This document shows, piece after piece, positions 621 to 21,400 of a stretch of 64,000 bases of DNA. The stretch lies in the NCBI GenBank assembly GCA_048013815.1, contig CM106585.1, positions 5,208,001-5,272,000 on the forward strand, read 5' to 3'. The stretch's first letter is position 1. Each line of letters opens with the position of its first letter. The notes under the pieces were generated by a model. It saw only the letters and a program-made list of their open reading frames with translations. It searched no databases and was not told the origin of the DNA. A program made the translations under genes and the position numbers. The stretch comes from Setoptus koraiensis. Its lineage: Eukaryota; Animalia; Arthropoda.

Positions 621-1597
621 AAGTGCAACACAAACAGTCAGACAGTTATAAAAGAAGAATAGACAGTTGTTAAGTGGCAGCCTCACTGACAGTTAGACAG
701 CCACAGACAGGCGAACGGACAGACACAGGTGAGACGGATGAACGACGGACGCACCAGAGGCATATAGGAACTGATATACAAACAAGGAGAGAATTGACCA
801 GATTATCTCCCCGTTATAACTCATTGTGGTGGCCAATCGCGGCTCGCATCAGTCAGCTTGATAGTGTTGGCGCCCAATGTGTAGCAGCGCATTATATAAC
901 ATATAACATTAGCGGCTTGAGCAGCATCTTTTTAGCATCTCGTTTAGTCGGTTGGATTGTTCAACACCGTTATTATTAGCGGTAGCAGCGATAACAACAA
1001 CAACAACGACACCATCTCAACAGCAAGTGCAGTAGCAATGCGAGGCGCTCACAGTACCCTGGAGCAGGCAAGCACAACACTTAGTTGGTATCATTTTTCC
1101 ATTTTGAGATTAGCCATCAACAGCAGCATCAGCAGCACAACCATCGACAACAACAGCAGCAACAACAACAACCAACAATCAACAAAATCAACAGCATCCA
1201 TCGGCCGCTAGCCAGCAGACAGTCGCTTGACCATCACACCATATTCACGCATTCAAGAACTCCTACTCACAGGTAAACGATCAATGAACCAGCGGCAAAA
1301 ATAGAAAACGCGAAACGAGCAACGCGAATTGTTACGTCACAAGGTGGCACAACGCAACACAAGGCAACACAAACGTACATTGCATAGACGCTGTTGCCCA
1401 GATTAGATAGTGAAGAGCGTGAGAGTAGTGACAGAATCAATCAATCAATTGCTCACTCAACAATCATTGCCATTAGAGATGTGATCATCTCGTGTCAATC
1501 CCATCACCACACACGATTAAGCACACACAAGATTAAATCACTGACCACTCGCCACTCGACACTGACCGAATCCTCGCCATCGTCACTACTGGCCATT

Positions 1598-4500
1598 ATG
1601 CAGTCGGCTGCCAAACGTTCCAGTGGCCCTATTATAGACGCTTCGAGCATGCACAATTCGCTTCGAAAGCCCCAAAATAGAAATAACAGTGCGCTAATTG
1701 TTAATAAACACAATCCAGCGGCTCAACGCGACAGCAACAACAACAGCAGCAACAACAACAATTCACAACGACACAAGCGGCCGAGTCGGCAGCAGAGAGC
1801 AGAACAGAGCGGCCGAAAGTCGCCAATAAGCAAGAACAAGATGAATAATTCACACAGCCAGTGCCAAAGAATCAAGATCGCAATGACATTAGACGAAGAG
1901 ACACAAGAAAACAATTATGCAAATTGCCACCTAGATTGCGGTGCGCACAACAAGCAGCAACAGAACAAACAAAGTTACAACGACAACAAGTGTCAGCATC
2001 ATCGGGTGTCGTCAATCAGCCGACACAAAAGAATCATGACATACGACAGTCATCGGTTTATAAAACAGAGAAAGAACCTCACAGAGTCCAATAGCCGCTC
2101 TTATGCGACAACAACAATCACATTATTTCTATTCTCAATAATAATAATAATAATGACAATGTTGCAGCAGCAGCAACAGGTGGCAGCAAGCGAACAGCAT
2201 GCGTCGTCGTCGTCGCTGTCAAAATCGTCGAGTTTGTTGCGCTTGAAAAAGTCCTCAGATAAACTCAACAGTTGGCTCTTGAAAGAGGTGGCCCCAAAGG
2301 TGGCCAATCGTGTCTTGGACAATCTGTTTCAGCCTGCGCAGGCAACTGGCAGCGCCAGCAACAACGGTAACGGTCAGCAACAATTATCAGCTGCAACGTC
2401 TCTATTGTCAGTGTTGCCTGTCATGTCATCTGTGGTTGCCGGACAGTCAAAATCAACGGCGCCCAGCGTGCTAGAGGAGCAAGCTCAACAGCAGGCCAGA
2501 AATCTAGTCTCTAGCGGCTTTCAAGTGGCACAAAATTTAATTATGCAAGAGGGCAGAAAAATGTTTGGCCGCGCCATGGACAAACAATTGAATAAGTTAC
2601 TTCAAAAGACCACCACCTATTCATTGAGTCCTTCGTCGCGCGAACAACAACTAACATTGTCCAACAATGCACACACCAACAGCAACAACAACAACAACAA
2701 CAACAACAGCCCTTGGTCGCTCTCGAAAGAGTCTAGCTACGACCAAATTGGCTCTAACAGTGACAATAATCAATTGGACGATAATCCGCTCGTTTTGCGC
2801 GCCGAGCACGCACAAAATGTCACCTCATCGCCGCCTCCGCCGCCGCCCTCGCCCTCACCACCGAACAGAAATTATTTAATGTCGAAAGCACAAAAACTTC
2901 GCCAACAACAACTATTGCAACAACAACAACAGCACCAGTACAATGTGCAACAGAGAAACACAAACAGGGCCCAGCAACAACAGAGGCACCATTCGACGGT
3001 GGCAGCCGCCACCACCATCAGCAATCACAATAGACAAAACGGGCCCATAAAGCCGCTGCAACACGCCATCCAGCAACAACGCCAACAACAACAGTCGCCG
3101 TACGCCACCAATCTACTAGATTCGCAAGCTTCCATGGGCACCGGCGCTCAGCTAGATTATCAGACTGCATCAATTAACAACAATGAACAGCATTCGCAGG
3201 ATATGAACATTGTCAGAGCGCCCATAAGCAGCACAATGTCGTCCATATCCAGCGAGTTGCCGTCGATATTTTCGTCGGCCATCAACTCAATAATATCCTC
3301 TTCATCATTGTCGTCAGCGCAACCCACCCACACTCAACAACAACAAATGCACTCCATTTCGTCGTCGTCGTCGTCGCCAAGCTCATCTGGCCTACTAGCA
3401 GCAGAGGCATTGGTTTCCGCACACAAGGCGCCCCCTACTACGTCACTACTGACAACAGCGGCCTCAACACAACAACAGGTTTTCATAACGGACCAAGGTG
3501 ATAACAAGGTTAAAATATTGGCCAACAACCGTTCTAAGAAGCCCTCTTACGTCCATTCCACCAATCATCCAAACAAATCGTGGTACAGCACCAATAGGCC
3601 CAACAATCCCTATTTAACCAACACAGGTAAACACAGAAATCAGCAGCAACAAAACAACCGGTACCAGCAACAACAAGCCAGCACTCCGTCTAGTACCACG
3701 AGCACTACCTCCTCAACTACCACCACCAGTACAACAACTACATCAACAACCACCGAAAGTCCGCCCACTATGCCCTCTATAGAGATTGTCACTCAACAAT
3801 TATTGCCACAACACCAAACCCAGGCAACTAGTGATAAAGCGCCCCAACCAACTAATAAGCCCACTAATAGCAAGATGTCATCATTAACAAAGACTCTGGT
3901 AGCTGCGGCCGCAACCACAGCACGACAATCTATCACATCCACGGATGCCATACCAACGGCATTGGGGGCGCCATTGTATCATCTCAGGCCCAATTATACC
4001 TCTACTAGCATTATGGTGCCGCCAAAACGAGCCACTCCGCTAGACTTGATGAGACCAAACGCAAAATTGGCCGCACAATACATTCAAAAAGGTATCCATA
4101 GTGTGTCAAGTACAATATTTGGACGCCAACAAATGAATTGGGCACGCCGGCTCGGACTGAGCTCGATGCTTCTATCGGGCCTCATTTACGGAGTTGCTCT
4201 ACTGGCGGGTCTACCGCCAAATGCTCCCGCTTTGGCCGGACTCGAAGGTAACAACCTATAGACAATCTATAATGATCTAAACTCACACTCCTAGCATGCT
4301 CGTTCTATTCACAGTTGTTTTTTTTCACCCTTTAATATCTAAATTTCTATCTATCTTTGCCTATTTAATTCTACCATCAATAACCATTTGCAATTTAATT
4401 CGCAAAGCTCTCGGTGTCCTGGGTAACAAGAGAAGAGGCGGCCAAAAGGAACCGCTAATCGGTTCTGCCTCTGGTGGTAATTTGTTTTCTGAACAATTGA

Positions 4501-4886
4501 ACAAAATGACTATACAGCAACAGCAACAGTTGCTTCCTTTTCTGGATCATCTCATCAAACAGGAACAAAGTAAACAAAGATTTCTATTAAGCCAAAACGA
4601 CAACAACAACTTTAACGGTAATTTAATGTTGCCTTTGATACAGAGTGGCGCTCAAAATCTCATTGAGAGGGCTGCCCAACCGTCGCATCATAGTTTTTTG
4701 CATCACCACGACAATGGGGTCGACAATGGGGCATTAGTAGGCCGACTGGTGACAATGAATCAGGGAATAATGGCGCCTTTTATGAGCCAATCGGATCAAT
4801 TACAAGAGGAATCGTCTACATCAAATTCATGGAAATTGTTCAATCAGGCCCAACAAGATACAATAAGAAGGAGGAGAAAGCGCTAG
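1598..4886 (+). CDS. Orphan Q/N/S/T-rich membrane or secreted protein, model join(1598..4247,4408..4886)
   Basis: 955-aa ORF whose first ATG is at 1598. It has hydrophobic segments ITLFLFSIIIIIMTML and LGLSSMLLSGLIYGVALLAGL. A phase-1 donor G|GTAAC at 4248 joins in frame to acceptor AAG|CT at 4407 (ALGVLGNKRR). No family recognised; the start is uncertain. Confidence 0.65.
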
Positions 4887-6260
4887 TCACACTAACATAA
4901 GAGCCATGATGAAACACAAATTGGCAACAACACCATTCATATTGACAAACAACACCACCATTTAGCTAACCTACTGGTCACCCTAAGCAAAATGGCAGCA
5001 ATTACAACAGACACACATACATATATTATACAGATTAACTAGGAACAAGGATCAGTATGTTCAACAATTGTTGTGTTTTGTTTTTAACTTTACATTTTTT
5101 CTTTTGTATAACATAATTATTATTATTATTATTATTTTTATTCTGTTGCAGTTCATCAACATTATCCAAAGCAACCTATATAAAAACTGTTGATTATCTC
5201 ACTGACAAATAAGCGTACACAATCATTCTCACATCGTGTATAGCTAATTATCTGCGACAATTACCGATTTCGTCACCATTTCGTTGAATCTATTTCAATT
5301 GGGGCCCAGCCTAACCAGAACCGAATCAATGAATCTATAATAGTGGGTGCCTACTGTGCAGCAGCGCCTCGTGAGGTGCACAAGTTGTGCAACAAATTAT
5401 TGCAAAAAATAAGCCTTTTGAAGCTTATCTATCGTAGCGGGCTATGCGCACGTTTTTTGCAAACCGGCTCGGCTAACAAAAGGTGCAACAGTTGTGCACC
5501 TATCACAAATTGTAGCATTTTCGATTATTTATTCGACGCGATTTACAATTGTTAGACGGATTCTCGGGCCCCGATGAATATTCATGCAAACGCGGCAATC
5601 ATTCGGCGGCTATTGGGGCGCCAATAATCCCCGAATGGCAAAAAACGAAGCCGTCTGAGTGGCTGTAACAAGGCTGCTTGCACATTCCTTTCTACGCTCG
5701 GTTCGAATGTTGGTTCGAAGAAAAGAATTCTCTCTCGTTTATACATGGCATGGCATCGTGTGTGTGTACGCGTTCTTCTCTGATGCTTTTGTTTGTTGTC
5801 TGTGCAGAGAGAAAGTTGCACACAAATAGGCGCTGTGGTTGTTACGCGTATGCGCCTGTATTTTTAATATTATTGTGTATGAAAACCAAATCAGCATAGT
5901 GGCGTGGATTCGCTGAGCATGTGCTGGGCCTGTGCAGAACAGCTCATTGTGCGGAATGTGCTTGCAGCGCCAGCGTATTATAGTGCACTGTGGTATAGCA
6001 ATGCACCAAAAACACCAAAACACCAGAAATACCAGAACAGCCAAACGGTTGAACTGCCAGCATAATGGAATTGTTTCTTTTTTTGTTACTAACCTAATTT
6101 ATTATTATTATTAATTGATAAATCATTATTTATTTTACCTATATATGCATATATATATATACTCATATAAATACGCATATATATATTGCAACACGTAACC
6201 CACAAACAACGCTCACTCATTTATATACTGCTGACACACACACACACACACACAAAGAGA

Positions 6261-9014
6261 ATGGCCAGTATAACCAAGGATCCAAAATTAGCCGATACGC
6301 CCAAACCCAAGAGGCCTCCACCTCCGCCTCCACCGCCACCCCGGGTTAATGGAAAAAATAGCCCATTGTTGCGCTGCTCAAGCCCGGCTAGTTCCTCATG
6401 CAATGGTCATCTTACAAGTCAGCAACATTATGCGTCATCTTGGCGTGGATCAACAACAGGCTCAACAACATCGTCCTACAATACTGCGACCACTTGTTGT
6501 CATAGCTGTCATCATCACCATCCAGCTCATACAAATCATCATCATATACATAATAACAATAACGATCATAGGTGCCAATCTATTAGCTCTAGTGCATCGG
6601 CTCACGGTGGCTCCTCTAATTACAATCAAATGTGCTGTAATCAAATGGTCTGCTCTATGAATGTGTGCAGAAAACTGATCGATTTACAACAACCCCAACA
6701 ACATCATTATAATAGTAACGTTTCATTAGCGCCCACCTACTGCTGTCCATCTAGTAGTATGAGTAGTGCTTTGAGCCACAGTAGTTTAAGCCACAGCCAG
6801 CATCATAATAATAATAACAATATTTATGCTCCTATGAGTAGTTCGAGTGACACACACAACAACTTTGCATCTATACCATCTAGATTAAATTTAAGTAACG
6901 GAAGCGGCAATTCTACTAATTATAGATTATCACATCATGCACATAATCAATTGATGATGAATCAGCAAGACTTTCTCGAGAGTTCCAGTGAAATAAGCAC
7001 ATCATCCGCAGGTTGCCATCACAATAATAACACGCAAATGCATAATATGTGCTCACATAAACTCTTATATCATAATAATAGTAATAACAATACCAATGCA
7101 ACAGCAAGAGCGCATAGGCCTTGTCCACCAACTCCGGATCAAACAAAGACAGCTGCGATACCTAATACACCTCCCCCACCACCTCCTATTCAACAACCAT
7201 GCCCATATAATCCCGCGACAAGCAATAGGCAAACAAAACCACCAGTGCCTAGTGTTCGTTCACTACCCAAATCACCGTACATTATCAATAAGGATCAACA
7301 AATCAATAGTAGTAGCAAGAGAATTAATGTTCTACAATCAGATCAATTAGAAAATTTAAATATAGAAATTCTCTCATTAACAGATGCTTCGCCAAATAAT
7401 AATTCGGATGGCTCAATAAAACCTCAATTATCACCACTACCAAAATTAAGAGAGAAGAGAGCCGATGGAACATTCTCTACTGGTCCCAAAAGTTACGAGC
7501 GTTGCAGTGAACGGGCTTATATGCGTTTTATGGAACATCACTATGAAAGCACATCCAAGTATTTGCATGAACGACAACAAAAAATACTAAAACTAAAGAG
7601 TGAATATTTGAGGTCGCCCATGATGGTTCCAAACCCATCCTTTGAAGAGGTTTGTAAGGATCTATTCAGAAAGGAGTCCATCAATCTCAGATTGAAGCGT
7701 CAGAAGATGAGTAGAGATGACTTTGAAGTTATACGATTGATTGGTCGAGGAGTCATCGGTAAGTAGGCAGCGGCCATTATGACTTGAGGTATATAACAAG
7801 TTTTTTGAACTTTTTGTCTAAATTATTCTTCACTTTACTTATTTGTATATTTCGCAGGCGAAGTCTCGCTTGTAAGGAAGAAATCTAAATATCTCAATGA
7901 GAATGATATGCTTTACGCAATGAAAACTCTTGACAAGGAAGAGGTCCTCAAACGTAATGGAATGGCTCATGTATGGGCAGAAAGAGATTTTCTTGTGGAA
8001 GCAAATAATGAATGGATAGTGAAAATGTTTTTTTCTTTTCAAGATAAACAGAAACTATATTTCATAATGGAATATACCCCAGGGGGAGATTTGATGACTT
8101 TGTTAATTAGGGAAAAAATATTTAGTGAGGATGCTGCAAGATTCTACATTGCGCAGATATCTCTCGCAGTTCAATCTGTTCACGACATGGGAGTTATACA
8201 TAGGGATATAAAGCCAGACAACATCTTAATTGACAAAGATGGTCATATCAAGCTTGGAGATTTTGGGCAATGCACTGGATTTAAATGGCAGCATAATATT
8301 CAGTACTATCTAGATTGTGAAAAATCAGCAGAGAACTCATCGACCAATCAAGATAATGAACCCTTTTGTCCAGACAAGACTCTGACTCAGGAGCTCGGGG
8401 AACGTCAGAATCAGCAGGAGCAGAGAAAAAACTATTCCGTCGTAGGATCCACTAACTATATGGCGCCTGAAGTTTTTGGTCGTCAGCCTTGGACGAAATT
8501 GTGTGATTGGTGGAGTGTGGGAGTAATCTTCTATGAGATGATCGTAGGATATTGTCCATTCAATCCCCCACCAGGCACCGCCCTTGATGAATTTGACAGC
8601 ATTACTAATGAGAACGGTGAAACAATATTACTTACCCATGACCAAAAAATTCAATACCGAATAATCAAGTGGAGAAAGTATCTTAATTTTCCATCTGACG
8701 CCGAACTTTCACACGAGTCTAAAAATCTGATACTTGGACTCTTGAATGATGTTGACTATAGACTGTGTCAAAGAGGTATTAGAGATTTAAAAAATCATGC
8801 ATTCTTCAATAATCTAGAATGGGACAAAATAAGAAGCTTGCAGGCTCCTTGGCCGCCCCAGATAGAGAATAATGGTTTAGGCAATTTTCCTCAGGAAGCC
8901 TTGCCACAACCATTTGTATACAACAGCGAATGCGCCAACTCTAACTTACAGACCAATCAATGTTTTAAAACCTTTTATGAATTTACATACCGAGCAGACT
9001 TTGAAACTAGTTGA
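6261..9014 (+). CDS. wts: Warts/LATS Ser/Thr kinase (Hippo pathway), join(6261..7758,7858..9014), 884 aa
   Basis: MOB-binding NTR (RFMEHHYE...RKESINLRLKRQKM). The spliced Gly loop reads IGRGVIGEVSLVRKK. Also YAMK, HRDIKPDN, DFG-CTGFKWQH, YSVVGSTNYMAPE, CDWWSVGVI and the hydrophobic motif FYEFTYR. The phase-1 intron 7759..7857 (GTAAGT...TTCGCAG) restores the frame. Confidence 0.93.
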
Positions 9015-9083
9015 TGCAGTCATACGAAAATGTACCTAGAATGAATAAACAATAATTGATATAAAATAGGGTGTTCATTTTAA

Positions 9084-12000
9084 TTAGGCCATACTGTCAC
9101 TATCATCATTGTCGTCATCACTATCATCAACATTTTTCGTTTTGACAATGTTATCATTCTCGTCGTCATCATTGACGCTCTTACTATCGCCATCATCATC
9201 ATCTTTGATGCTCTTGCTGTCGTCATCATCGTCGTCGTCTTTGGTGCTTTTGCCGCCATCGTCATCATCGTCTTTGCTGCTTTTGCCGCCATCGTCATCA
9301 TCGTCTTTGCTGCTTTTGCTGTCATCATCATCGTCGTCGCTATCACTATCGCTGGCATCATCATCTTTACCATGAAATTCTTTTTGATCGTCCGAACTGC
9401 GCTCAACTTCGGAATCAGAATCGTTCAGCTTCGACTTAGAAGACTCAGCAATAACCAAAGACTTATTTGGTCGTTCTTCGTCATCGGAATCAGCACTGTC
9501 GGAATCATTTTCGGACGAGGAAACAATTTCTTTCGATTTGAATTTGCTGGATGATGATGATCTTTTACTGGAAGATGTTTCGCCTTTGGATTTTCTTTGA
9601 CTCTTGGATTTTCTTGACTTCTTATCTTCACTAACTCGTCGGTTCTTTGCTTTCTTCTTCTGTCTCTCAAGGCGCTCTTCATTAGCAAGCTTTTCGTCGG
9701 CGGAGTTACTGGCATCAGTGATGAAGCCATCGGTATTTTCAGATCTCTGAATTTTTCTCTTCTTTGAAGGTCTTTCGTCCATAGGCTCCTCAGCAATTTT
9801 GTGTTTTGTTTCCTCTTGCTTCCTAATGATTTCTTTTCGCTTGGCTTCCATCTCTTCTTTTCTGCGCCTCTCTTCCTCCTCTCTTAACCGTTCTTCTTCT
9901 TCTTTAGACGCTTTACTGAGAGCTAGTTGTTCGTCGTGAAGACGCCTTCGTTCTCTTTCGTCGTCATCTAATTTACGTGCTCGAGTAACAAAGATTGTCG
10001 CCTGACTCAACAAGTCCTGACATTCCCTAACTTCACGGGCTGCAGCATTTGTATCCAACTTTGATTTGTCGCCACTTCCACAGAGGTAGTGGAAGTACTT
10101 ATGCGCCAACCCAAGCTCATCTACAGACATCAAAACTGTTCTTAACGAACTTTTCGTATCTCTAAATCGCTGGGAGGCCAATTTTTTCAAGACTATAGCC
10201 AAGTTATATAGGATTACAGTATCATGGGGACAAACATGGCGAGCTTGAAGAAGCGTGTTCTTACATTCATCTAATTTGTTGGCCTTAAAATATGCTCTTG
10301 AAATGTAGAGCATAATCTCAGTGTTTGGATGTGAGTAGAACTTTTTAAGGCAGTTCTCGTACATCTGGACAGCGGCTACATATTGCTTTTGTTCCACATA
10401 GATGTGAGCAATGTTAACCCAAACATCGGGGAAATCAGCTGTAGCTTCTCTTACTTGAGCAAATACATCTCGAGCCTCATTCAGAAGCCCTTTATTGGCG
10501 AGTACACAACCTATACCGCTTGCAGCCCATATATTCCTAGGGTCGTGCTTTAAAGCGGCCTTGTAAAATTGCAATGCCCTTTCACGTTGGCGTTTCAATT
10601 TTTCCTTATCTTTGATAGGCTGATATAGATTTTGAAGCCAAACATTGCCCATAGCAATCAATGAATAAATATCTGGATTTTGTTTGCTCTTCTGATTAGT
10701 TTCTAGTATTCTTTCGAACTTCTTCTGACCAGGGCCCCATTCTTGTTTTGCCAAATGTAGATTTCCAATCAAAGACCATGCATCAGCGTGATCCGGATCT
10801 ACTCTCAGTGCTTCCTTAAACCTATCCGAGGCGTCGAAAATTTGTCCTCGATCTCGATCCATACAACCTAATCGTAAGTAACAGTCTATGTAATTGGGGT
10901 GATTCTTGAGAATGTCTTTGTAGACTTTTTCAGCTTCATCGTGTTGGTAAAGAGATTCATAGAGACGACCGAGATTGTAGCGAATCGTATAGATGATGCA
11001 ACTATAGTATTGCTCATCATTCATCATTCCTTCCTCACACTGTTTAAGTGCTAGATTATAATATGTTTCTGCCTCAGTCAGATTCTTGTTAGCAAATAGT
11101 AAAGCCGCTATGTTGTTATATATTTCAGGAGGGACAGAACCTCCCTCAGTCTCCTCAAGTATCTGTATGGCAGTTTTGTAGGCTGTAAGGGCTAACTGAG
11201 TATCTTTTTGTTCCGAAATCGAGGCTAATTCAATCCAAGCTGTGTGATCTTTCGGATTCTGTTCGGTAACTTTTTTGAAGTAGTTCAATGCTTGTTCTCG
11301 TTTTGTTTGACTGGTTGTTAATGCATAAAGTGTACCCAGAACTTTCATAGATTCATAGTCATTGGGATGCACCTTTAAAACGTTTTCGAAACATTGTGTT
11401 GCTAAATCCAATTCACCACGATGAATGTACATTTGACCCAAACCATACTGGGGTAAAATAAATTGAGGACTGCTAAATTGTGTGGCTTTGTAATAAAATT
11501 CGAAGGCTTCGTCGTATTGATTATTTAAATGGTAGGCTCTTGCCATTTGATAACAACTTTCGGCCTGCATAGCCTCTACATCTGTATTTTCAAGGGCTTT
11601 CCTTGCCAAATGCATAACCTCGCGGTCTTTCTTTCTAAAGAAAAAGTGATTGGCCAAATGAATTAAAACCATTGGATCATTCGGATCAATTTTGTAAGCT
11701 CTCTCTAGCATTTTTACACCTTTTTTCATTGATTCCACTGTTTTCTTATTCAATTCTATGATAGCCAGACCAACAAGTGCACCAACACAACGTGGGTCAA
11801 CAGCTAGTGCCCTATTGAATGCCTGCTCGGCTTTCGCGATATTATTAAGACGATAAAAACAATGTCCCATTCCTAGTCTAATGTCAGCAGGGCACCGAGC
11901 ATTCAAGTTGAGTGCCTTCTTGTAGAGTTGTAAAGCTGTTCTTTTACCTTCTAGTTCCTTCTTATTGAATTCAATACATGCTCTTCCGAGCAACGAGGGA

Positions 12001-12697
12001 ATGTTTTCAGGTTCTCCATGTTCTTGCTGCTGTGACAGAACAAAATTGAATTGAACATCTGCCTGTTCTGTTTTTCCCTCTATTAAACAATAGTAGGCAC
12101 GTCCAAGCAAATGATACTGATCGTATAAGAGCATTGTATCAGCCTGGGTGAAGAGATCTGTGGCCCGAACGAAGTATTCTTTCTTTTTGTCTGGATTTTT
12201 GGTTTGCTTTCCTTTTCGGGCATAGTAGATGGCCAATGTATCTAGAGCCCTCATTTTCTCTTTCACAGCTTCACTTTCTTCGGCTTGGTTCTGAGATCCT
12301 CGCGGATCTAAGCTATCTGCATTCTCAAGAGATTTTTCTAATAGCAGTTCCAGAGCATCTCCGTTTCCTTGTCTGTAGTATTCCAACTGAACGAGCAGCA
12401 AAAGAGTTTTATTATTAGTATTATTGTAGGTATAATGCTAGTGCCAACTTTCAGTTTCTCTATCATTGGAAGAACATCTTTATATTCAGAATATTTTTGT
12501 AGTTTTCGCTGATAGATTCTACGTTCTACAATATTTCACTAAGAACAACTTACTGCAAGTGTGATCCATAGGCTCAGTTTTGCCTTTTCGTTTTTAAGAA
12601 CGCCTAAAATCTCTTCGGGTAGAGGTAGATTCGAACAATCGAGTTCGATAACTTCGTCGGCATCCCTGAGCAGAGGTATCTCTATGTTTCCCGGCAT
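9084..12697 (-). CDS. CTR9: PAF1 complex subunit CTR9, join(12697..12554,12386..9084), 1148 aa
   Basis: Exon 1 MPGNIEIPLLRDADEVIELD...LWITLA splices in phase 0 (GTAAGT at 12553, CAG at 12387) to LEYYRQG. TPR array with RLGMGHCF, WGPGQKKFERIL, NIWAASGIGCVLA and FAQVREATADFPDVWVNIAHIYVEQKQY. Acidic tail. Confidence 0.97.
9248..9313 (-). repeat. 33-bp coding tandem repeat in the CTR9 tail (KSSKDDDDDGG)
   Basis: Two exact copies of ttttgccgccatcgtcatcatcgtctttgctgc (9248..9280, 9281..9313), with degenerate copies on either side (~9170-9365). Confidence 0.9.
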
Positions 12698-12974
12698 GTT
12701 TCAGTCCGAATGACGTATGTGTTATGTCCCAATTGATTGTAAAAAGATTTAATTTTATTATTCTTCAGTTGAATTGGTTAAGAACAGGTCGTGTCCCAAA
12801 ATTCAACTAGAAGAGCGGTTTTGACTGGACTTGCAGAACTAATACACAAAATGAGCGGTCACGTGATGCATGTGTGCATATGTGTGTGAGATTCTACCTC
12901 AGCAAACGTACGAGTTAACCGCACATATCTTTCATCAGGTCAGGTTTAGCCCATTGGTCTAAACCGCGAGCGCT

Positions 12975-13056
12975 GCAACTATGGCCGAGTGGTTAAGGCG
13001 ATGGACTAGAAATCCATTGGGTTCTACCCGCGTAGGTTCGAATCCTACTGGTTGCG
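12975..13056 (+). tRNA. tRNA-Ser (AGA)
   Basis: 82 nt. Acceptor stem GCAACTA/TGGTTGC, A-box TGGCCGAGTGGTTAAGGCG, anticodon loop CT-AGA-AA, long variable arm, B-box GGTTCGAATCC, and a T-run terminator a few nt downstream. Confidence 0.97.
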
Positions 13057-13335
13057 GAAAACTTTTTGCTAATTCCTTTTCCAATTCATAATGTATAGGG
13101 CACGACTATTCGGACCTCACTCGATGTAAGCTAGCTAACCACTAACATCCACTCTTATGATAAACCCATTACAAACGACATTTTCTGTTTATTTGTTTTT
13201 GCTCGTCACAAGCTTGTCAAACACATAAACATAAGGATACTTCCTTGTAGTGCGTGACTGTATCTTATATGGGACCCCCGAACTGTATCAAAGAGGATTG
13301 TCTTCCACACACCGATAACTAGCAAACATAAGATA

Positions 13336-14363
13336 ATGGCTTCTGGTCCAAAGAAGAGGGATGTTATTGTGATTGGTGCTGGGCTCAGTGGTAAGTAGCA
13401 TGATAAACCTCAGATTTGTAGCTTGGAAAAGTAGAAAAAAGAACTCTGCCAGTTTTAGTCAAGTTTCTACTCTGCTGATGATCACTAGCAATCAAAAGAG
13501 TGATGACAATACTAGAGCCTATAGAAATTACTAGATTAACTTGAGTGGTCACACAGAAAATTTGAGTACCCGTCTCATCTCATTGCGATGTAGTGGAGGT
13601 GCAAGCGAGTTAATAAAAGTGAATGGTGACAAATGCTTTGTAATCTCTTACATGCGAGTAATTTTTGCATGGATATTAATATTGTGAGGTTGTCTTCTGA
13701 GCAAGACGACTAATAACGGTTAATGGTGGCAAAACACACCAAACACCAAATAACATAGAGATTTTATCAGGGAACAATCAACTATTGATAGCCGATGTAT
13801 AATAGTATGGTGGTGATGCTGCCAAGCAGATTAGCTGGATGTTACAGACATTCATACTTTATAGATGCATATAAAGTAAACTGCTTGCATAAACTGCAGG
13901 CTGTGTGTGTTGTATAACTGCAGTGAGTGTTTTACAAGTTCACTGCTCTTTTCTGCCAATGAGAATCACACCACATCATTTGCGCAGAAATATAACCTCA
14001 TTCTTTGTGGCAATGTCTATACGGTCTAAAATTCTACAACGGTTGGCGTACAAAATACAATATCATAATTATTATTATTATTATTATATTGAAAATACAA
14101 ACAGATATTTTTATTAGTATTATTCGATATCTCTATCATTCTATTATTTGGTGACCATTATCTTAAATTAAATAATTGTGATGCCACATTCTAAACCGTA
14201 GATTGTTGTTACTGTAGTGCCATAGTTATTATATCATATTACATTATCGATAGATATCAAACTGAACACAACAGAAATCTATAACACCAACCATAGCACT
14301 ACTAGTAATAGCAACCACGACAGAAACCACGGCAACCACAAGAAAAAAAATAACACCACCAAA

Positions 14364-14404
<41 letters not shown>

Positions 14405-17400
14405 CAATCGGAATTATGGATTGTAATAATATTTGAACACTACCATTATCATTATTAGTAATATTATTATTAATATTAGTTGGCAGACTGTTATGTTGCA
14501 CCTCAATGGAAACACGACCTTTCAAATTGAGAAAAGTCACAGTATCTCTACCTCGTGATGCTGCTAATAGATTGCGTCATCTAGCTCAAAGAGGTGATAA
14601 TGCCTTAATAGAACTTGGTATCTTATCTGTCCAATTAGAAGGAGATGAAGCAATATCATTGATGATAGAGCCATCAATGCCTCTAGGTGAAATTGTTACG
14701 CCTCCTGATGAACCTATCAGTAGTAGTGAAACACCACCTACGTTCGCATCATTTGATGATGTGCCAATAAACGCAACCAGTGCAAATCAAGCTAGTTGTA
14801 TGACATCATTGATCAATGCACCATCAGAATCGGTCCCGTACAATACAAACTGTGATATACAGATGCCTCAGATCGAGCCTTCAGATACACCCGACTTGTT
14901 AAGCATAAATGACAATGAATTTTGTTCTTTATTACATTTCGATACTAACAAAAGTTTAAGGTTAAATAACGACCATCACCATCATCACCACCACCATCAC
15001 CACCATCATCATCATAATCAAAACTCTATGTCATTATTGGAATTAGATGACACCTCGCTACTTCACTCTACGGATTTTCATGCTGCTGATTTTATGACTA
15101 TCGATGGTCTGAATGATGAGATAGCAAACGAATATGACTATCATTAGGTGTATCTTTTAAGAACAAGAAAATATATATATGTATATGTATAGGTATATAT
15201 ATATATATATTTATATATTATATCTATAGATACACACATATATATACATACATAAATATATATATATATATAAATATAATAGAGCGTACAGGTTGTGTCT
15301 TATTCTTGCAACTAAACAGCCAACCCCCTTCCCCCTGGGATCAAAATGAAACAATTCTTTAGCGTAACTAACCAAGTTCTTGTGACTATCAGATCGACAA
15401 TTTTGAAATAATGATATCGATGGGCAACGGCATATATATACACATACATACACTGATATATGTATGCATCGATCATGTTCATATATATCAGATTCACAAA
15501 TAAAATAAGTTGCAAATAACTAGATTAATATCCATTGAAGCATTTGCAGGCACATGTATCTCAATGGATTTCAAACTCTAACGTACAGACTGAGACTCTC
15601 CAATGATCTATCTCGTACCTCACTCCTTTATTTGGCCCTCTTACATCATTCAGTATATCTATCTTTATCATAGAACAATACTTTGAACATCTATTTTGCC
15701 TTATTCTCATGAAACTGACTCACCTAACTCTGTGGAAATACTTGTATTATCATCCATTCTTTCAGGTTTAGCAGCGGCAAAATTGTTGACAGAAAACGGA
15801 CTTGACGTAATTGTCCTTGAGGCTAGAGACCGTGTAGGTGGACGTACCCATACTACACTAAATTCACAAAATAAACTATGGATAGACCTCGGAGCTTCTT
15901 ATGTGGGGCCAACACAAGACTGTATATTAAGATTGATTGAAGAGTTCGGATTGGAGACTTATCCGGTAGACGAGACAAAATCTCTGGCTTATCTGGCCAC
16001 GAAATCACCTGTCAAACTTATACAGTCGGTTTTCGGCGAAGAAAAAAATGACTCTGATGGACAACAGATATTGAAAGTTAGACAAAAATGTATGACCGCG
16101 GCAAATAACAATAGTAGAGTATCGAGAAGGTCCAAGTTTTCCAATGAAGATCCGTTTCCTATTGGAGGCTTCTTCACCCAATTGGATTTAAATCACGTTG
16201 TTCGACTCATCGATTATATGGGGCGCCAAATTCCTTCCGACGCTCCATGGCAATGCCCGTATGCTTATGAATGGGATGCAATAACGGTCCGACAATTCAT
16301 AGATAAAGTTGCCTGGACGAAGGATGTCAAAGATTTCATGCATAATGTATTTGTCAGCGTTGATGTTTGTTGCGAATCAACTGACGCGTCTCTACTTTGG
16401 TTCCTTTGGTATGTCAAGCAATGTGGTGGTTTTGGTCGATCCATAGCAACTACCAATGGTGGTCAGGAGCGTAAGATCAAGGGTGGCACTCAACAAATTA
16501 GCTGTAAAATCAAAGAGAAACTCGGTAACAATAGAGTATTACTCAATAAACCCGTACATAAGATCGATCAAACATTGGGCCCGCTGGTCGTCGTAAATAC
16601 CTTAGATGGAAGCCAGTATCGAGCAGATTACGTAATAATTGCTTTGTCGCCACACCTCCAGTTGAAGATGCACTATGCTCCACCCCTTCCTCCTGAAAAG
16701 AATCTACTTGCTCAACGTAGTCCCATGGGAATGGTGGCCAAAATAATACTGTATTATGAGACAGAATTTTGGAAAGAAAAAGGTTATTGTGGCTCATTCG
16801 TCATACAATCTGAAGACCATGTTAACTATCCAGTCATGTTAGGGCTCAACGAAACTAAACCTGACGGGAGTCATCCTGCTATCATTGGTTTCATAACGGC
16901 ACGATACTGGTATGAAACGCGCCATATGTCAAAAGAGGAGAAGGCTAGATGTGTCGCCAGAAGCTTTGCTCAAGCTACAGGGTGCGAAGAGTTCCTTACG
17001 CCGATACACGTTGAACATTTCGATTGGACTTGTGAGCAATATTCCGGTGGTTGTTACACAACATACTACCCTACAGGTGTTCTTAGTAAATTTGGTCCCT
17101 ACTTGAGGCAACCATTCGGTCGTATCTATTATGCTGGAACCGAGACAGCAATCAAATGGTCCGGTTACATGGATGGAGCAGTTAGTGCGGGCGAAAGAGC
17201 AGCTAGAGAGATCTTGCACAAGCTTGGTAGACTGGACGAAAGTCAGATTTGGCAAGTTGAACCGCCTTCGACTACGGTTCCACCTAGAGAATTTAACTAC
17301 TCTTGGTGGCAATTGAACTCACCATCTATAGATTCAATTGTCAAAACAATATCAGGTACGGCTTTGATAGCGTTAATCTTTGTCCCATTTTACTTGCGTA

Positions 17401-17417
17401 ATTACACATGTCGTTGA
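13336..17417 (+). CDS. MAO: Flavin-containing monoamine oxidase (MAO-A/B-like, C-terminal membrane anchor), join(13336..13390,15766..17417), 568 aa
   Basis: Exon 1 MASGPKKRDVIVIGAGLS (donor G|GTAAGT at 13391) joins TTTCAG|GT to rebuild the FAD motif GAGLSGLAAA...EARDRVGGR. Also SGGCY (covalent FAD Cys), AGTETA, GYMDGAV and a C-terminal hydrophobic helix. Confidence 0.95.
14245..14252. promoter_or_regulatory. Possible DRE (TATCGATA) upstream of the nested NCOA6-like ORF
   Basis: Perfect palindrome ~260 bp before ATG 14506. An 8-mer can occur by chance in AT-rich DNA. Confidence 0.3.
14506..15147 (+). CDS. NCOA6: Miniature NCOA6-like protein (N-terminal TRADD-N-like domain fragment, poly-His, acidic tail), nested in MAO intron 1
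   Basis: RKVTVSLPRDAANRLRHLAQRGDNALIELGILSVQLEGDEAISL closely matches remembered human NCOA6 [45 protein letters not shown]. 213-aa ORF with a 14-His run; AATAAA at ~15499. Confidence 0.75.
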   Translation: METRPFKLRKVTVSLPRDAANRLRHLAQRGDNALIELGILSVQLEGDEAISLMIEPSMPLGEIVTPPDEPISSSETPPTFASFDDVPINATSANQASCMTSLINAPSESVPYNTNCDIQMPQIEPSDTPDLLSINDNEFCSLLHFDTNKSLRLNNDHHHHHHHHHHHHHHNQNSMSLLELDDTSLLHSTDFHAADFMTIDGLNDEIANEYDYH

Positions 17418-18305
17418 TAATTACGACAATAGCATTTTATTCTAGTCAAATTTGCTAGTCATCTTACTTACAACTAAGCAAATACAATACACACTTCTAG
17501 TTAAAGACATTATACTGTATTACATACATTGTTTGCTAGCAACAGACCAGTTGAAGTACAGAATATGCTTCATACATATAACTACCAATTCAAATAAACT
17601 GCTTCTTTAGTGATAGAACTATTATAGTTTTAATCTTTATGGCAATATTTTCTTTGGAATGAGTGGAAGAAATTCTCTCGAAGGAACAGTCAAATGAAGT
17701 AGCCGCTTCGATGATTATTGCCTAGTTGCCGACATACATGGAACGAATAAAAGTGCTACTTGGTCATCAAATTTATCCCTTTACAGAAGGTGTCATCTCA
17801 GACTATTCAGATTCATTTATTTTTGATGATTGGATCGAGACCAGCTCCGGTTAAATGTTGCATGCAAAAGAGGACAAGTAAAATGTAGATAAGTTTTGGA
17901 TGGTTCAGTGGTCAACAAGTGGTAGATTTTTCAAGGTTTGTTGCGTGAATCTCACTACTTAAGAGCTCTTTGATCCCATGCACTTCCTCCGTTCTCTCAT
18001 CATCAATGTGTGCTATCAGCAGTTAGTGTCGAATAAAAGTTAGAATAGAGACTTGTTATAACAAGACTTCACTTTTGCTGATTAGAATACCTCATCAAAT
18101 AGAGTGCTAATAAAACGCGATCTAAACATATGAATGATTCTCAAATGATTTCGTGACTACAAGGTGAGTGATTGGATTGTTATTGTGTTGTATTGTTAAC
18201 ATTGGTTATCATGAAGTTGCATAGGATCAGGTATAGGATGGCATAGTAGGTAGATTATCTGAGACTACTATTATGCAATTGTTTTTTATTTGTTGTTGTT
18301 GTTGT

Positions 18306-18425
<120 letters not shown>

Positions 18426-21400
18426 CACTCATCATCCCAAGCAGCAAGTGTTCGATGATGAAAGCTATCGACCGGCGATCGAGCTTGTTTAATTTCATTT
18501 ATTGAACCATCACAAGATATGAGACAGACGATCTCTAATGATCAAAACTACTATAATCATTGTACACAGTTCAATATCATTCTATTTTTGCTACCGCTAT
18601 TACTTGGTACTTTATTTTTGCAGTGCCCGGTGAGAATTACTTACCACTAACTAGCTATGGAGTGGAATCTTTTTTTGATTTACGTCGTTAGAAGCCGTCG
18701 TCGCGTTTAGTGAAGGCGGTCAACGTAAAAGTCACAGGCTCAATCGTTCACTTTATTATGTGTCGCCATTTCGTGTCTAAGGGCCACATCATGATTGTAT
18801 GAGAAGAAGACCACTAATCAGAGAATTGTATGTACAACTAGTTTAACCGCCTCTTTGAATCATGCAGTTCTGCCGCTGCTGCCGTTGTTGTTGTTGAATG
18901 AATAAATTTTCTGATGATCTATACAAAAGCAACTATGCTCATGATGATGATGAAATGTAAGGGCGAGAAGTAGTGGAAGTTGCTATAGCCTCTCAAGTAA
19001 GAGTATTATATCTTCTTCGTTTTGAACAGAAACCTAGATAACTCTAAGTAGACTCTGCGTGCTATCATGTATTAGTAGTTAGTGGCGAGTTGGGCAAGTA
19101 TTTCAGCCCTCTAGCCAGTTTGTTAATATTAATAGTTGCTGACTAATGGTCGAACAATTGTTGCTGTTATCATTGAAAGAAGCAACTTTTTTGGCTAGCT
19201 ACTTTTAGCCTTACCATCTAACCAATGTGAAAGTGGTCTTGTTGCAGCTGTGTGGTGGTGAAAAGAATCTTCGAAAAAGAGTTCATGCTTAAACAGTTAT
19301 TTGTTACCATCATCATTACCATACTAACGTTATATAGAGGCTTCATTTTCGATCTCCACCTTTAACTTTTTTTCTTCTTCTTTTTTTCTCTCTGGTTATC
19401 TTATTCGTCTTCTTTTTTTATCTTTTGTTCTTGATCATCCTCATAGCAACAATCAGTAACATTTCACTCTTACACGATGTCTAGACAGTTACTTTTGATG
19501 TATTGGTGTAGACTTGAACATGGCAATTGAGGGGTATCGGCCAGCTACCTATGACCGACAAAGATAGAAGAACTTTTCTCACACATAAAAGATTGGTAAT
19601 GGACCAGGTTAACTACAACATCTACAGTGGCTTCAACTGTAAGTGTGCATATGTATGTACAAGACAACAACACAGCAAAACATTTCTGCTGGGGCTACCT
19701 CAAAAAGATAATGACCATGTGATTTCTTCAGCTAACCAATAACAATAACATAGTGGCTTATAGGAAACGGGACGCTTGGTTTTATCAATCGGTTTGCGCC
19801 ATTTTGTCTATACATCGAGTTGTGTTTTGCTTGGTAGTGTATCTGCCAATATACAAAGAACAGCACTACAACCATTCGAAAGTAAATTCACTTTTGTTCC
19901 CTGTCAGCATGTCAGAATGCTCAATACAATTACAAAATAAATAGTCGATTTGACAACAGCATAGGCGCTGACTCATTCAGGTAACATCTCACCGATGAGT
20001 TATGATGTTGTAAAAAACTGTAGTGTATATGCGACAAAAGGAATAGAGAATGACGAAAACTTGTAGAACTTTTATCATAATCAACAACAATAACTAACAA
20101 GCTAATGTGGACCACATGACTCATGACTGATGGTGTTACATTTATATATTTGCTGTTTGTTGTTGGGGTTGACTGAGTTGTTGCATCTAGTGAAAACTAG
20201 TCTGAGCGGTGCTCATTAGAGACTCGACCATTTCGTTGGCTGCAATTCTCTCTGGCTCTCCTTCTCATGCCAAGACAGGGAGAGAGAGTGTTTGTCGGAG
20301 CAGTTGTTGGTATGTATTACAACCATTAGTGAAGAGATCTCTCAGGAAGTTTATGTATTTGAACTAAGAATAGGGTATAAAAAAACTCTCTCATTCTATG
20401 AAGGTAGGCAAGGATTAAGTAGTTAGCGAATTAGGTGAGATAGGTGGATTAGATCATTGCGACGGGGGCTGAGGGCGAGCGAGGGGGGAATAAATAATGT
20501 AAACTGCATGCAATAGTGTTATAGTAAGACAAGAAGAATAAGAACAACGACAAAACTATAATAATACACATATAATAGTGGTAATAATCGATGCAGCGAT
20601 AGCAATAAATAAAAGATTAAAAGGAACGAAGAAAAGAAGGAGAAGTAAAAGATATCTCTCTGTTGGATCTGTTCAAAGTTAGCACAGTTGTTGGTGTCTG
20701 TGCAGGAGCAGAAAAGAGTGCGCCTACTCAGAAGTGCGCAAACGACGGCAATTACAACAGTGTTGCACTGAAACAACTGTAATTTGCGCATTTGGACAAG
20801 GGCAGTTTTCAGTTGAGAATTCTGAACTGACAATTCTAGAGGCATCGATCCGAGACACCTTCTGTGCACATCTGCTATGCACATTTACATCATTGACACA
20901 ATACTGCTCACAATGGCGCTTTTCAAAACTGCAACACCTTCACTGTTTTCCAGTGTGTTTTCATTTGAGTCAAATAATTTGTCTGTGTGAGTGTGTGTGT
21001 AACATTAACCTCTCAATGTAAAGTGCGTTCCCTCTTTGGATACTCTAACACTACAGAGTAGTGATAATCGCACACATTGAGAAGGCAACACATAAATAAA
21101 ATCAGAGGAGATATTCATTCATGTGTGCTGATACTACACACAACAGCCTGAATAGAAAATACAACCAACAACAACAACAACCACCACCGCCGCCGCCACC
21201 ACCACAGTGAAACAACGAAAACAACGACGCTATCGAGAGGCATTCGGCCACAATAGAGGAAAAAGAATAGAATAATAGTAATAATAAGAATTCTTTCTTC
21301 GTTATTCAATTCTATTTTATCTTGCATTCATAATAGCTTAATTATTCATCATACTCTCTCAGACAAGGACCAATGCATAGGAATTATACACATCACACCA

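What the first reader, a model, noticed from the sequence alone, without database searches (positions are those of the whole stretch)
13336..15765. Miniature NCOA6 nested on the same strand in MAO intron 1, possibly sharing MAO exon 1
Seen: a 213-aa ORF with the second half of the NCOA6 N-terminal domain, a 14-His run and its own AATAAA (~15499) lies inside the 2375-nt intron, before the MAO exon-2 acceptor. MAO exon 1 ends in phase 1. Two phase-1 AG sites (14458, 14479) lie in the open frame upstream of ATG 14506, so exon 1 could splice in frame to this ORF. A TATCGATA at 14245 offers an independent promoter instead. Established: NCOA6 is a very large (~2000 aa in human) MLL3/4-Trr coactivator. 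Inference: one locus may choose between an amine oxidase and a stripped-down chromatin cofactor through alternative last-exon use.
Basis: partly seen in the sequence, partly recalled or inferred. Interest (0 to 1): 0.75.

Follow-up and report, generated by a model that had tools for sequence, protein, structure and literature searches.

The report
Miniature NCOA6 gene inside MAO intron
A gall-mite amine-oxidase gene carries, inside its first intron, a separate and very strongly conserved small gene that keeps only a 50-residue core of the large chromatin coactivator NCOA6, but nothing supports the idea that the two genes share an exon.

Summary
The 213-aa ORF (14506-15147, +) lies in the 2375-nt first intron of an amine oxidase gene. 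It matches Pfam NCOA6_TRADD-N (E 3e-15), but only profile positions 44-93 of 144. It has a 14-His run and a single AATAAA at 15499.

It is a real gene. A sister species (Logan contig L010) has the same nesting. There the ORF is 97-99% identical in DNA (16 synonymous and 3 replacement changes, dN/dS 0.045), against about 79% for the neighbourhood. Conservation ends about 35 nt past the AATAAA.

It is one of two copies in this genome. It belongs to an apparently undescribed family of short proteins (108-316 aa) found on compact Logan contigs, one of them tied to an eriophyoid-grade species. Family members have a Met, the half domain and an acidic disordered tail. Chelicerate NCOA6 is 1400-2900 aa.

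The exon-sharing reading is not supported:
- Both in-frame AG sites (14458, 14479) read AT in the sister species.
- The second copy and the family members elsewhere are free-standing genes.
- No first half of the domain is encoded upstream.

Two things stay open: where the transcript starts, and why synonymous sites evolve about 4-5 times slower than in the neighbouring genes. A role as a minimal adaptor of the Trr/MLL3/4 complex is inference only.

The parts
13336..13390 (+). MAO exon 1: 18 codons plus 1 base (phase 1), followed by the donor GTAAGT
   Evidence: The paralogous MAO on C2 and MAOs of relatives have the same exon and intron position.
13391..15765 (+). MAO intron 1, 2375 nt, which hosts the nested gene
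   Evidence: The 5' part, 13391-14450, is unique in the genome and holds no first half of TRADD-N.
14451..14505 (+). Conserved 5' flank or leader of the nested gene.
   Evidence: 53 of 55 bases are identical in the sister species, and the two differences destroy both proposed AGs. Homology between the two paralogs starts at 14488. The uORF is 21 codons.
14506..15147 (+). Mini-NCOA6 ORF, 213 aa, stop codon included
   Evidence: Against the sister species dN/dS is 0.045, with 16 synonymous and 3 replacement changes.
14518..14667 (+). Half TRADD-N module (residues 5-54), taken to be beta3-alpha2-beta4 of the fold
   Evidence: Pfam profile positions 44-93 of 144. AlphaFold2 gives pLDDT above 90 for roughly residues 10-50, with helices at 17-29 and 32-36, and disorder elsewhere. 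Alignment A1.
14974..15015 (+). 14-His run (residues 157-170) inside the acidic disordered tail
   Evidence: In the sister species the run is shorter and interrupted by one Asn. The tail has 25 D+E against 2 K+R.
15148..15540 (+). Probable 3'UTR, with the only AATAAA at 15499-15504
   Evidence: Blocks are 91-95% identical in the sister species up to about 15538, then identity falls to about 70%. The AATAAA is conserved and unique in this stretch.
15766..17417 (+). MAO exon 2: the rest of the amine oxidase, through the stop codon
   Evidence: Pfam Amino_oxidase, E 4e-69, covering the full profile. The closest named relatives are Fragariocoptes setiger (59%) and Aceria tosichella (55%).
12974..13057 (+). 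tRNA-Ser(AGA) between CTR9 and MAO. Context only, not part of the nested gene.

Best explanation
The ORF is an independent, intronless gene nested on the same strand inside intron 1 of one of two MAO paralogs of an eriophyoid-type gall mite. It is translated from ATG 14506, and its transcript ends about 20-40 nt after the AATAAA at 15499.

The protein keeps the second beta-alpha-beta half of the NCOA6 TRADD-N domain (about 50 residues). A 150-residue acidic, His-rich, disordered tail follows. The protein is a diverged member of a lineage-specific family of miniature NCOA6 derivatives, which replaces the usual 1400-3000-aa coactivator.

Shown here: the gene structure, the conserved nesting in a sister species, strong purifying selection, family membership, and the absence of the first half-domain and of any long NCOA6 in the genome.

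Inferred, not shown: the half-domain needs a partner strand (self-pairing, pairing with the second paralog, or docking on another protein). It may tether an acidic activation-type tail to the Trr/MLL3/4 complex, whose catalytic subunit the genome encodes. MAO transcripts must read through the nested gene's poly(A) site, so some interference is possible, but there is no exon sharing.
For: - The Pfam match is 56.7 bits, on profile positions 44-93 only.
- PF13820 hits only two places in the 48.7-Mb genome, and both are short ORFs. A tick NCOA6 (1417 aa) matches only these two loci, at its residues 52-105 with 57-59% identity.
- Sister-species contig L010 has the same ORF upstream of MAO exon 2. 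The ORF is 97-99% identical in DNA there, against about 79% for the neighbourhood. dN/dS is 0.045, and Fisher's test of synonymous against replacement changes gives p 3e-9.
- Conservation runs through the 3'UTR to about 15538 and then drops.
- The two paralogs have dN 0.25 against a saturated dS of 1.3 over the domain.
- phmmer found short relatives P0005, P0029, P0040, P0096 and P0043 (108-316 aa) with the same architecture. They lie as single free-standing ORFs on compact contigs.
- P0029 comes from the same samples as an MAO in the eriophyoid identity range.
- An HMM of the first half-domain, built from 48 canonical NCOA6 proteins, finds nothing in 2.1 kb upstream here or 0.9 kb upstream of the paralog; the best E is 0.3.
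- AlphaFold2 gives a confident 45-residue module and disorder elsewhere.
- A Trr/MLL3/4-type ORF (ePHD, adjacent FYRN and FYRC, SET) is present in the genome.
Against: - No transcript evidence was reachable, so the transcription start site and promoter are unknown. The sister-species sequence for 13005-14450 is missing.
- Paralog homology and sister-species conservation extend 18 to 55 nt upstream of the ATG and cover an out-of-frame uATG. A conserved CAG sits at 14484-86. An upstream non-coding or coding exon is therefore not excluded.
- The conserved uS motif of TRADD-N is not kept: EPWNS aligns with RPFKL.
- The protein has no LXXLL and no PPxY motif.
- The tail does not align significantly with the C-terminal motif of the other short family members.
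- Binding to the Trr complex is pure inference. In the papers read, no function is assigned to the NCOA6 TRADD-N domain beyond a proposed interaction switch (PMC8195603).
- The very low dS (0.13 against 0.66-0.89) is unexplained. It could instead mean a chimeric Logan contig.
Confidence: 0.72

Rival explanations
1. MAO exon 1 is spliced in frame to an acceptor at 14458 or 14479. One promoter then yields either the amine oxidase or an exon-1::mini-NCOA6 fusion through alternative last-exon use.
For: In this genome the frame is open from 14437, and both AGs are phase-1 compatible with exon 1. Both genes lie on the same strand, and the nested gene has its own poly(A) signal.
Against: Both AGs read AT in the sister species, although the surrounding 55 nt are otherwise identical. 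The paralog and the family members elsewhere are free-standing and start at the aligned Met. The 18 residues of exon 1 are a Rossmann beta1 plus GxGxxG fragment and do not replace the missing 43 profile positions.
Confidence: 0.04
2. The gene has an unrecognised upstream exon. The conserved CAG at 14484-86 is a 3' splice site, and a 5' leader is spliced on at 14487. That leader could come from a promoter in the intron or be MAO exon 1 used as a non-coding leader.
For: Homology between the two old paralogs begins exactly at 14488, one base after that AG. It keeps four in-frame codons (LLCC) with two synonymous differences. The AG and its AT-rich tract are conserved in the sister species. An out-of-frame uATG at 14493 would be awkward in an unspliced leader.
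Against: The C2 paralog has no AG at the matching position. MAO exon 1 joined at 14487 is out of frame and would end in a 32-codon uORF that overlaps the ATG (worked out). No upstream coding exon was detected. The other family members encode their N-terminus contiguously. The genome is intron-poor.
Confidence: 0.15
3. The extreme conservation is an assembly artefact. Contig L010 would be a chimera of a very close relative (the ORF part) and a more distant species (the MAO part), so the selection evidence is overstated.
For: dS of the ORF is 0.13, against 0.66 for MAO on the same contig and 0.89 for CTR9. The sample yields more than one MAO. A (TA)n tract lies between the ORF and the rest of the contig.
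Against: The second MAO is the ortholog of this genome's own C2 paralog, not a second species. No MAO or CTR9 of a roughly 97%-identical genome exists in the protein collection. Identity falls stepwise (ORF 98%, 3'UTR 91-95%, then 85%, then 70%) and not at one breakpoint. Even under this view, 16 synonymous against 3 replacement changes still gives dN/dS 0.045.
Confidence: 0.08
4. The ORF is a decaying fragment of NCOA6, a relic exon copied into the intron, and has no function.
For: Only half of the domain is present. The protein lacks NR boxes and PPxY motifs.
Against: The ORF is intact in two species with dN/dS 0.045. The start codon, stop codon, 3'UTR and AATAAA are conserved. An old paralog has its domain under constraint. 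The same architecture is kept in at least five other species-level lineages.
Confidence: 0.01

Closest known systems
NCOA6 (ASC-2/NRC/PRIP; Drosophila Ncoa6), a subunit of MLL3/4-Trr COMPASS-like complexes
   Same: The core of the N-terminal TRADD-N domain is shared: 57-59% identity to tick NCOA6 over 54 residues, and a Pfam PF13820 match above the cut-off. This gene family is the only PF13820 match in the genome, consistent with descent from the usually single-copy NCOA6 (PMC8195603).
   Different: - It is 213 aa, against 1417-2868 aa in chelicerates.
- It lacks beta1-alpha1-beta2 of the domain and the uS motif.
- It has no LXXLL and no PPxY motif (motifs as described in PMC8286814 and PMC4118621).
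- There are two copies in this genome.
- It is intronless and nested in another gene.
Unnamed short TRADD-N-half proteins on Logan contigs (P0005, P0029, P0040, P0096, P0043)
   Same: They share the architecture: a Met-Asp/Glu start, no first half-domain, a half-domain of the type (K)VTVSLP...LGI(L/I)SVQ, an acidic low-complexity tail, and a single-exon ORF in a compact genome. At least one comes from an eriophyoid-grade species.
   Different: They carry a 14-85-residue low-complexity N-terminal extension. Four of the five (not P0029) share a C-terminal aromatic-acidic motif (..LEMYDS..LLF.DYTLN..) that the window protein does not match significantly. They are not inside MAO; their neighbours include RPL11, a HAD hydrolase, and an HBS1-like GTPase with a lipase.
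Same-strand nested intronless genes in first introns of this genome (earlier notes: ATG16 in YTHDC1, PTPA in ATG10)
   Same: The layout is the same: a complete intronless gene inside intron 1 of an unrelated host, on the same strand, in an intron-poor mite genome (those loci were not re-tested here).
   Different: Here the nesting looks young. It is shared with one sister species but absent from the MAO paralog and from another eriophyoid-grade species, whose MAO intron 1 instead holds an antisense aldo-keto reductase gene.

Membership tests
NCOA6 / Pfam PF13820 NCOA6_TRADD-N | Match to the family HMM above the curated cut-off | tested here: met
   56.7 bits against a cut-off of 22.5, E 3.1e-15. 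The six-frame search of the genome gives 57.7 bits.
NCOA6 / Pfam PF13820 NCOA6_TRADD-N | Complete TRADD-N (RRM-like) fold, beta1-alpha1-beta2-beta3-alpha2-beta4 | tested here: not met
   Only profile positions 44-93 of 144 match. An HMM of the first half from 48 canonical proteins finds nothing upstream; the best E is 0.3. AlphaFold2 gives a module of about 45 residues only.
NCOA6 / Pfam PF13820 NCOA6_TRADD-N | Conserved uS (tiny residue then Ser) motif in the beta2-beta3 turn (PMC8195603) | tested here: not met
   In alignment A1 the canonical EPWNS aligns with RPFKL in the window protein. The C2 paralog has a Ser in that column, but it is preceded by Lys.
NCOA6 (functional coactivator) | Long protein (about 1400-3000 aa) with LXXLL nuclear-receptor boxes | tested here: not met
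   The protein is 213 aa. It has no L..LL motif and only one F..LL, at residue 139. Chelicerate NCOA6 proteins are 1417-2868 aa and carry an LVNLL box.
NCOA6 (functional coactivator) | PPxY motifs that bind Yorkie/YAP WW domains (PMC4118621) | tested here: not met
   A regex scan finds none.
NCOA6 (functional coactivator) | Subunit of the MLL3/4-Trr complex | not testable with these tools
   All that could be shown is that a Trr/MLL3/4-type ORF (ePHD, adjacent FYRN and FYRC, SET) exists in the genome.
NCOA6 (orthology) | Single copy per genome, and the only gene of the NCOA6 clade | tested here: inconclusive
   It is the only PF13820 family in the genome, but it is present in two diverged copies. 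The nearest long relatives are chelicerate NCOA6 proteins. No phylogeny was built, because the shared region is only about 55 residues.
   Both phase-1 AGs read AT in the sister species. The only conserved AG is phase 2.
Short mite TRADD-N-half family (P0005 group) | Met start, then the half-domain, then an acidic tail, in a single free-standing exon | tested here: met
   Alignment A1. The tail has 25 acidic against 2 basic residues.
Short mite TRADD-N-half family (P0005 group) | Shared C-terminal aromatic-acidic motif | tested here: inconclusive
   Local alignment of the tails is no better than shuffles (z from -0.2 to 1.3). The exception is a short PP.EPI stretch shared with P0029 (z 3.0, reached by 3 of 500 shuffles).

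The most novel reading that the evidence does not exclude
Eriophyoid gall mites have reduced NCOA6 to a natural minimal version: one beta-alpha-beta half of the TRADD-N domain plus an acidic tail, 108-316 aa. This half-domain would still be the functional link to the Trr/MLL3/4 complex, working by pairing with itself, with its paralog or with a partner strand to rebuild the four-stranded sheet. The copy inside the MAO intron would also be constrained at the nucleotide level, with synonymous sites 4-5 times slower than in neighbouring genes, because it must serve at once as a gene and as a silent part of a host intron.
Probability: 0.25. Interest if true: 0.7.

Novelty: new variant of a known kind. 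Interest (0 to 1): 0.5.

Why it matters
[quoted passage not shown] This lineage keeps only about 50 residues of the domain, under very strong purifying selection, and discards the other roughly 90% of the protein. That points to the part evolution cannot do without. It also offers a small, tractable construct for binding and structural tests.

The locus is a clean case of a young same-strand nested gene in an intron-poor genome. The host's first intron carries different passenger genes in different lineages. The nested gene's unusually slow synonymous evolution is a separate question worth testing.

Tried and rejected
1. A hidden upstream exon encoding the first half of TRADD-N. I tried tblastx between the two paralog loci, six-frame reading of 12420-14490, and a dedicated HMM. 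Nothing was found.
2. TATCGATA as a promoter mark. The motif is not enriched. The sigma-70-type scan is irrelevant for an animal genome and sat at shuffle level.
3. RNA structure as the cause of the synonymous constraint. Fold z-scores were +0.58 for the ORF and -0.41 for the 3'UTR. The only Rfam match above its gathering score was the tRNA; the weak mir-297/mir-466 matches are on the TA repeat, far below their cut-offs.
4. Descent of the short family's C-terminal motif from the INPFTG.LEP motif of long NCOA6. Alignments were no better than shuffles.
5. Fold search with the model. Only Z values of 2.1 or less, which is uninformative for a half-domain.
6. PDB sequence search. Only His-tag artefacts came back.
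7. A split NCOA6 C-terminus elsewhere in the genome. The weak hit on C2 is a Gag-like ORF, so a chance match.
8. Synteny of the short family's neighbours with this genome. The HBS1-like gene lies elsewhere and the lipase was not found.
9. Naming the source species of the Logan samples. The run numbers occur in no searchable paper and the clusters carry no accessions.
10. The word-based protein search with the ORF found nothing, probably because the His run swamped the words.

Left out on purpose: the joined products (MAO exon 1 with exon 2, and exon 1 with the nested ORF) were not built or searched. Exons were searched by reference only, and the junction frames were worked out by hand from coordinates.
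Full report
**Where the window comes from.** The window is G000:C1:5208001-5272000, from a 48.7-Mb genome in two contigs. The closest named relatives of its amine oxidase are the eriophyoid mites Fragariocoptes setiger (59%) and Aceria tosichella (55%). Other Acari reach only 39-40%. This agrees with earlier notes that call the genome a gall mite.

**Anatomy.**
- A single-exon CTR9 ORF lies at 9084-12401 on the minus strand.
- A tRNA-Ser(AGA) lies at 12974-13057.
- MAO exon 1 is 13336-13390. It ends one base into a codon and is followed by GTAAGT.
- MAO exon 2 starts at 15766 after TTTCAG. The join restores the GxGxxG FAD motif.
- Inside it, on the same strand, lies the 213-aa ORF 14506-15147.

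**The domain match.** Pfam places residues 5-54 on positions 44-93 of the 144-position NCOA6_TRADD-N profile (E 3.1e-15, 56.7 bits, cut-off 22.5). The 14-His run and the single AATAAA at 15499 were confirmed.

**Is it a gene?** A Logan sample (SRR33593474) holds contigs of a sister species. L013 covers window 4380-13004 and L010 covers 14451-18953.
- L010 carries the same ORF upstream of MAO exon 2, so the nesting is shared.
- The neighbourhood is about 79% identical in DNA, with no 200-nt window above 92.5%. The ORF is 97-99% identical.
- Codon by codon there are 16 synonymous and 3 replacement differences plus a length change in the His run. dN/dS is 0.045 (Fisher p 3e-9). For comparison it is 0.12 for MAO exon 2 and 0.06 for CTR9.
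- Conservation continues in blocks through the 3'UTR, includes the AATAAA, and decays about 35 nt after it to the roughly 70% level of the remaining intron. That pattern fits a transcription unit ending near 15520-15540.

**Relatives.** PF13820 hits only two places in the whole genome. The second is a 127-aa ORF on C2, between a CSE1-type gene and a GLYR1-type gene. It is 55% identical over the first 135 residues and lacks the tail.
- Over the domain the two copies show dN 0.25 against a saturated dS of 1.3, so the duplication is old and both copies have been constrained.
- A tick NCOA6 of 1417 aa matches only these two loci, at its residues 52-105. No long NCOA6 was found.
- A full HMMER scan of 1.8 billion representatives found no close relative; the best hit was 53 bits. 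It did return the canonical NCOA6 proteins: horseshoe crabs (2868 and 1944 aa), Ixodes (1417 aa), Priapulus and insects.
- The scan also returned five short proteins, P0005, P0029, P0040, P0096 and P0043 (108-316 aa). Each has a Met-Asp or Met-Asn start, a low-complexity stretch, the same half-domain, an acidic tail and, in four of the five (not P0029), a shared C-terminal aromatic-acidic motif.
- They lie as single ORFs on compact, intron-poor contigs with unrelated neighbours, not inside MAO.
- P0029 comes from the same samples as an MAO 54% identical to the window's, which is the eriophyoid range.
- I found no paper on NCOA6 in mites.

**What is missing from the protein.** TRADD-N is an RRM-like beta1-alpha1-beta2-beta3-alpha2-beta4 fold with a conserved uS motif in the beta2-beta3 turn (PMC8195603).
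- By my mapping of alignment A1 onto that description, the mite proteins keep beta3-alpha2-beta4 only.
- Canonical EPWNS aligns with RPFKL, so the uS motif is gone in the window copy.
- An HMM built from the first halves of 48 canonical proteins finds nothing in 2.1 kb upstream here or 0.9 kb upstream of the C2 copy.
- AlphaFold2 gives pLDDT above 90 for about 45 residues (helices 17-29 and 32-36, plus short strands) and disorder for the rest.
- The tail has 25 acidic against 2 basic residues, no LXXLL, no PPxY and one FxxLL.

**The exon-sharing idea.**
- In the 55 nt before the ATG the sister species differs at exactly two bases, and these change both proposed acceptor AGs to AT.
- The only conserved AG (14485-86) is phase 2. 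Joined to exon 1 it would give a short out-of-frame peptide that overlaps the ATG (worked out by hand; the joined product was not built or searched).
- The paralog and the family members elsewhere are free-standing. They start at a Met that MAFFT aligns with this one, across N-terminal extensions of different lengths.
- The genome's second MAO (C2, 90% identical to the sister's second MAO) has the same phase-1 intron, but it is only about 150 nt long.
- In another eriophyoid-grade species, MAO intron 1 is about 3 kb and holds an antisense aldo-keto reductase gene, while that species' short NCOA6 sits beside RPL11.
- So the intron position is old and the passenger is young and lineage-specific. 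Earlier notes list several other same-strand nested genes in first introns of this genome.

**What stays open.**
1. The 5' end. Paralog homology starts at 14488, 18 nt before the ATG and one base after the conserved CAG. It covers an out-of-frame uATG (14493) that is kept in both paralogs and in the sister species. A spliced leader is possible, although the C2 copy has no AG at that point.
2. The slow synonymous rate. Fourfold-degenerate sites differ at 8%, against 34-36% in MAO and CTR9 (p 4e-6 and 5e-7). RNA folding and Rfam give no explanation. A chimeric contig is unlikely but not excluded.

**Function.** A Trr/MLL3/4-type ORF is present in the genome. A role as a minimal adaptor that tethers an acidic tail to that complex is plausible, but it is inferred only.

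**Verdict.** The gene is real and belongs to an apparently undescribed miniature branch of NCOA6. The alternative last-exon switch is not supported.

Noticed in passing
window 14506-15147 against L010 56-688: Synonymous sites of the nested ORF evolve 4-5 times slower than those of MAO and CTR9 in the same species pair: dS 0.13 against 0.66 and 0.89, and fourfold sites 8% against 34-36%. No RNA-structure or Rfam signal explains it.
   Followed up: partly
L002 1312-1692 (-) = G000:C2:21547880-21548263: A second, shorter copy of the mini-NCOA6 gene (127 aa from the Met, no His run and no acidic tail) lies between a CSE1-type and a GLYR1-type gene. Its domain has been under constraint since an old duplication.
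   Followed up: partly
L014 (G000:C2:5632214-5636794); L011 in the sister species: A second MAO paralog has the same phase-1 intron after GAGLSG, but it is only about 150-190 nt long with nothing nested. Both species have both MAO genes.
   Followed up: yes
L021 658-3817 (Logan SRR29837439): In another eriophyoid-grade species, MAO intron 1 is about 3 kb and holds an antisense aldo-keto reductase gene (1003-2125, minus strand). The same intron carries different passenger genes in different lineages.
   Followed up: partly
window 14493-14558: An out-of-frame upstream ATG opens a 21-codon uORF that overlaps the main start codon. It is conserved in the C2 paralog and in the sister species.
   Followed up: partly
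L017 7705-9675 (-) = G000:C1, about 22.469 Mb: A Trr/MLL3/4-type ORF piece with ePHD, adjacent FYRN and FYRC, and the start of a SET domain. It is the only FYRN hit in the genome.
   Followed up: partly
window 12974-13057: tRNA-Ser(AGA) lies between the divergently oriented CTR9 and MAO genes. The sister-species contig breaks inside it.
   Followed up: no
window 14360-14410 and 15160-15280: (CA)n and (TA)n microsatellites flank the nested gene. The (TA)n tract is mostly absent from the sister species and gives weak, sub-threshold mir-297/mir-466 Rfam matches.
   Followed up: yes
L019 1312-2346 (G000:C2, about 24.062 Mb): A 344-aa ORF that reads like a retroelement Gag by eye (no family scan was run). 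It came up as a chance weak hit to the tick NCOA6 C-terminus. Observed only.
   Followed up: no
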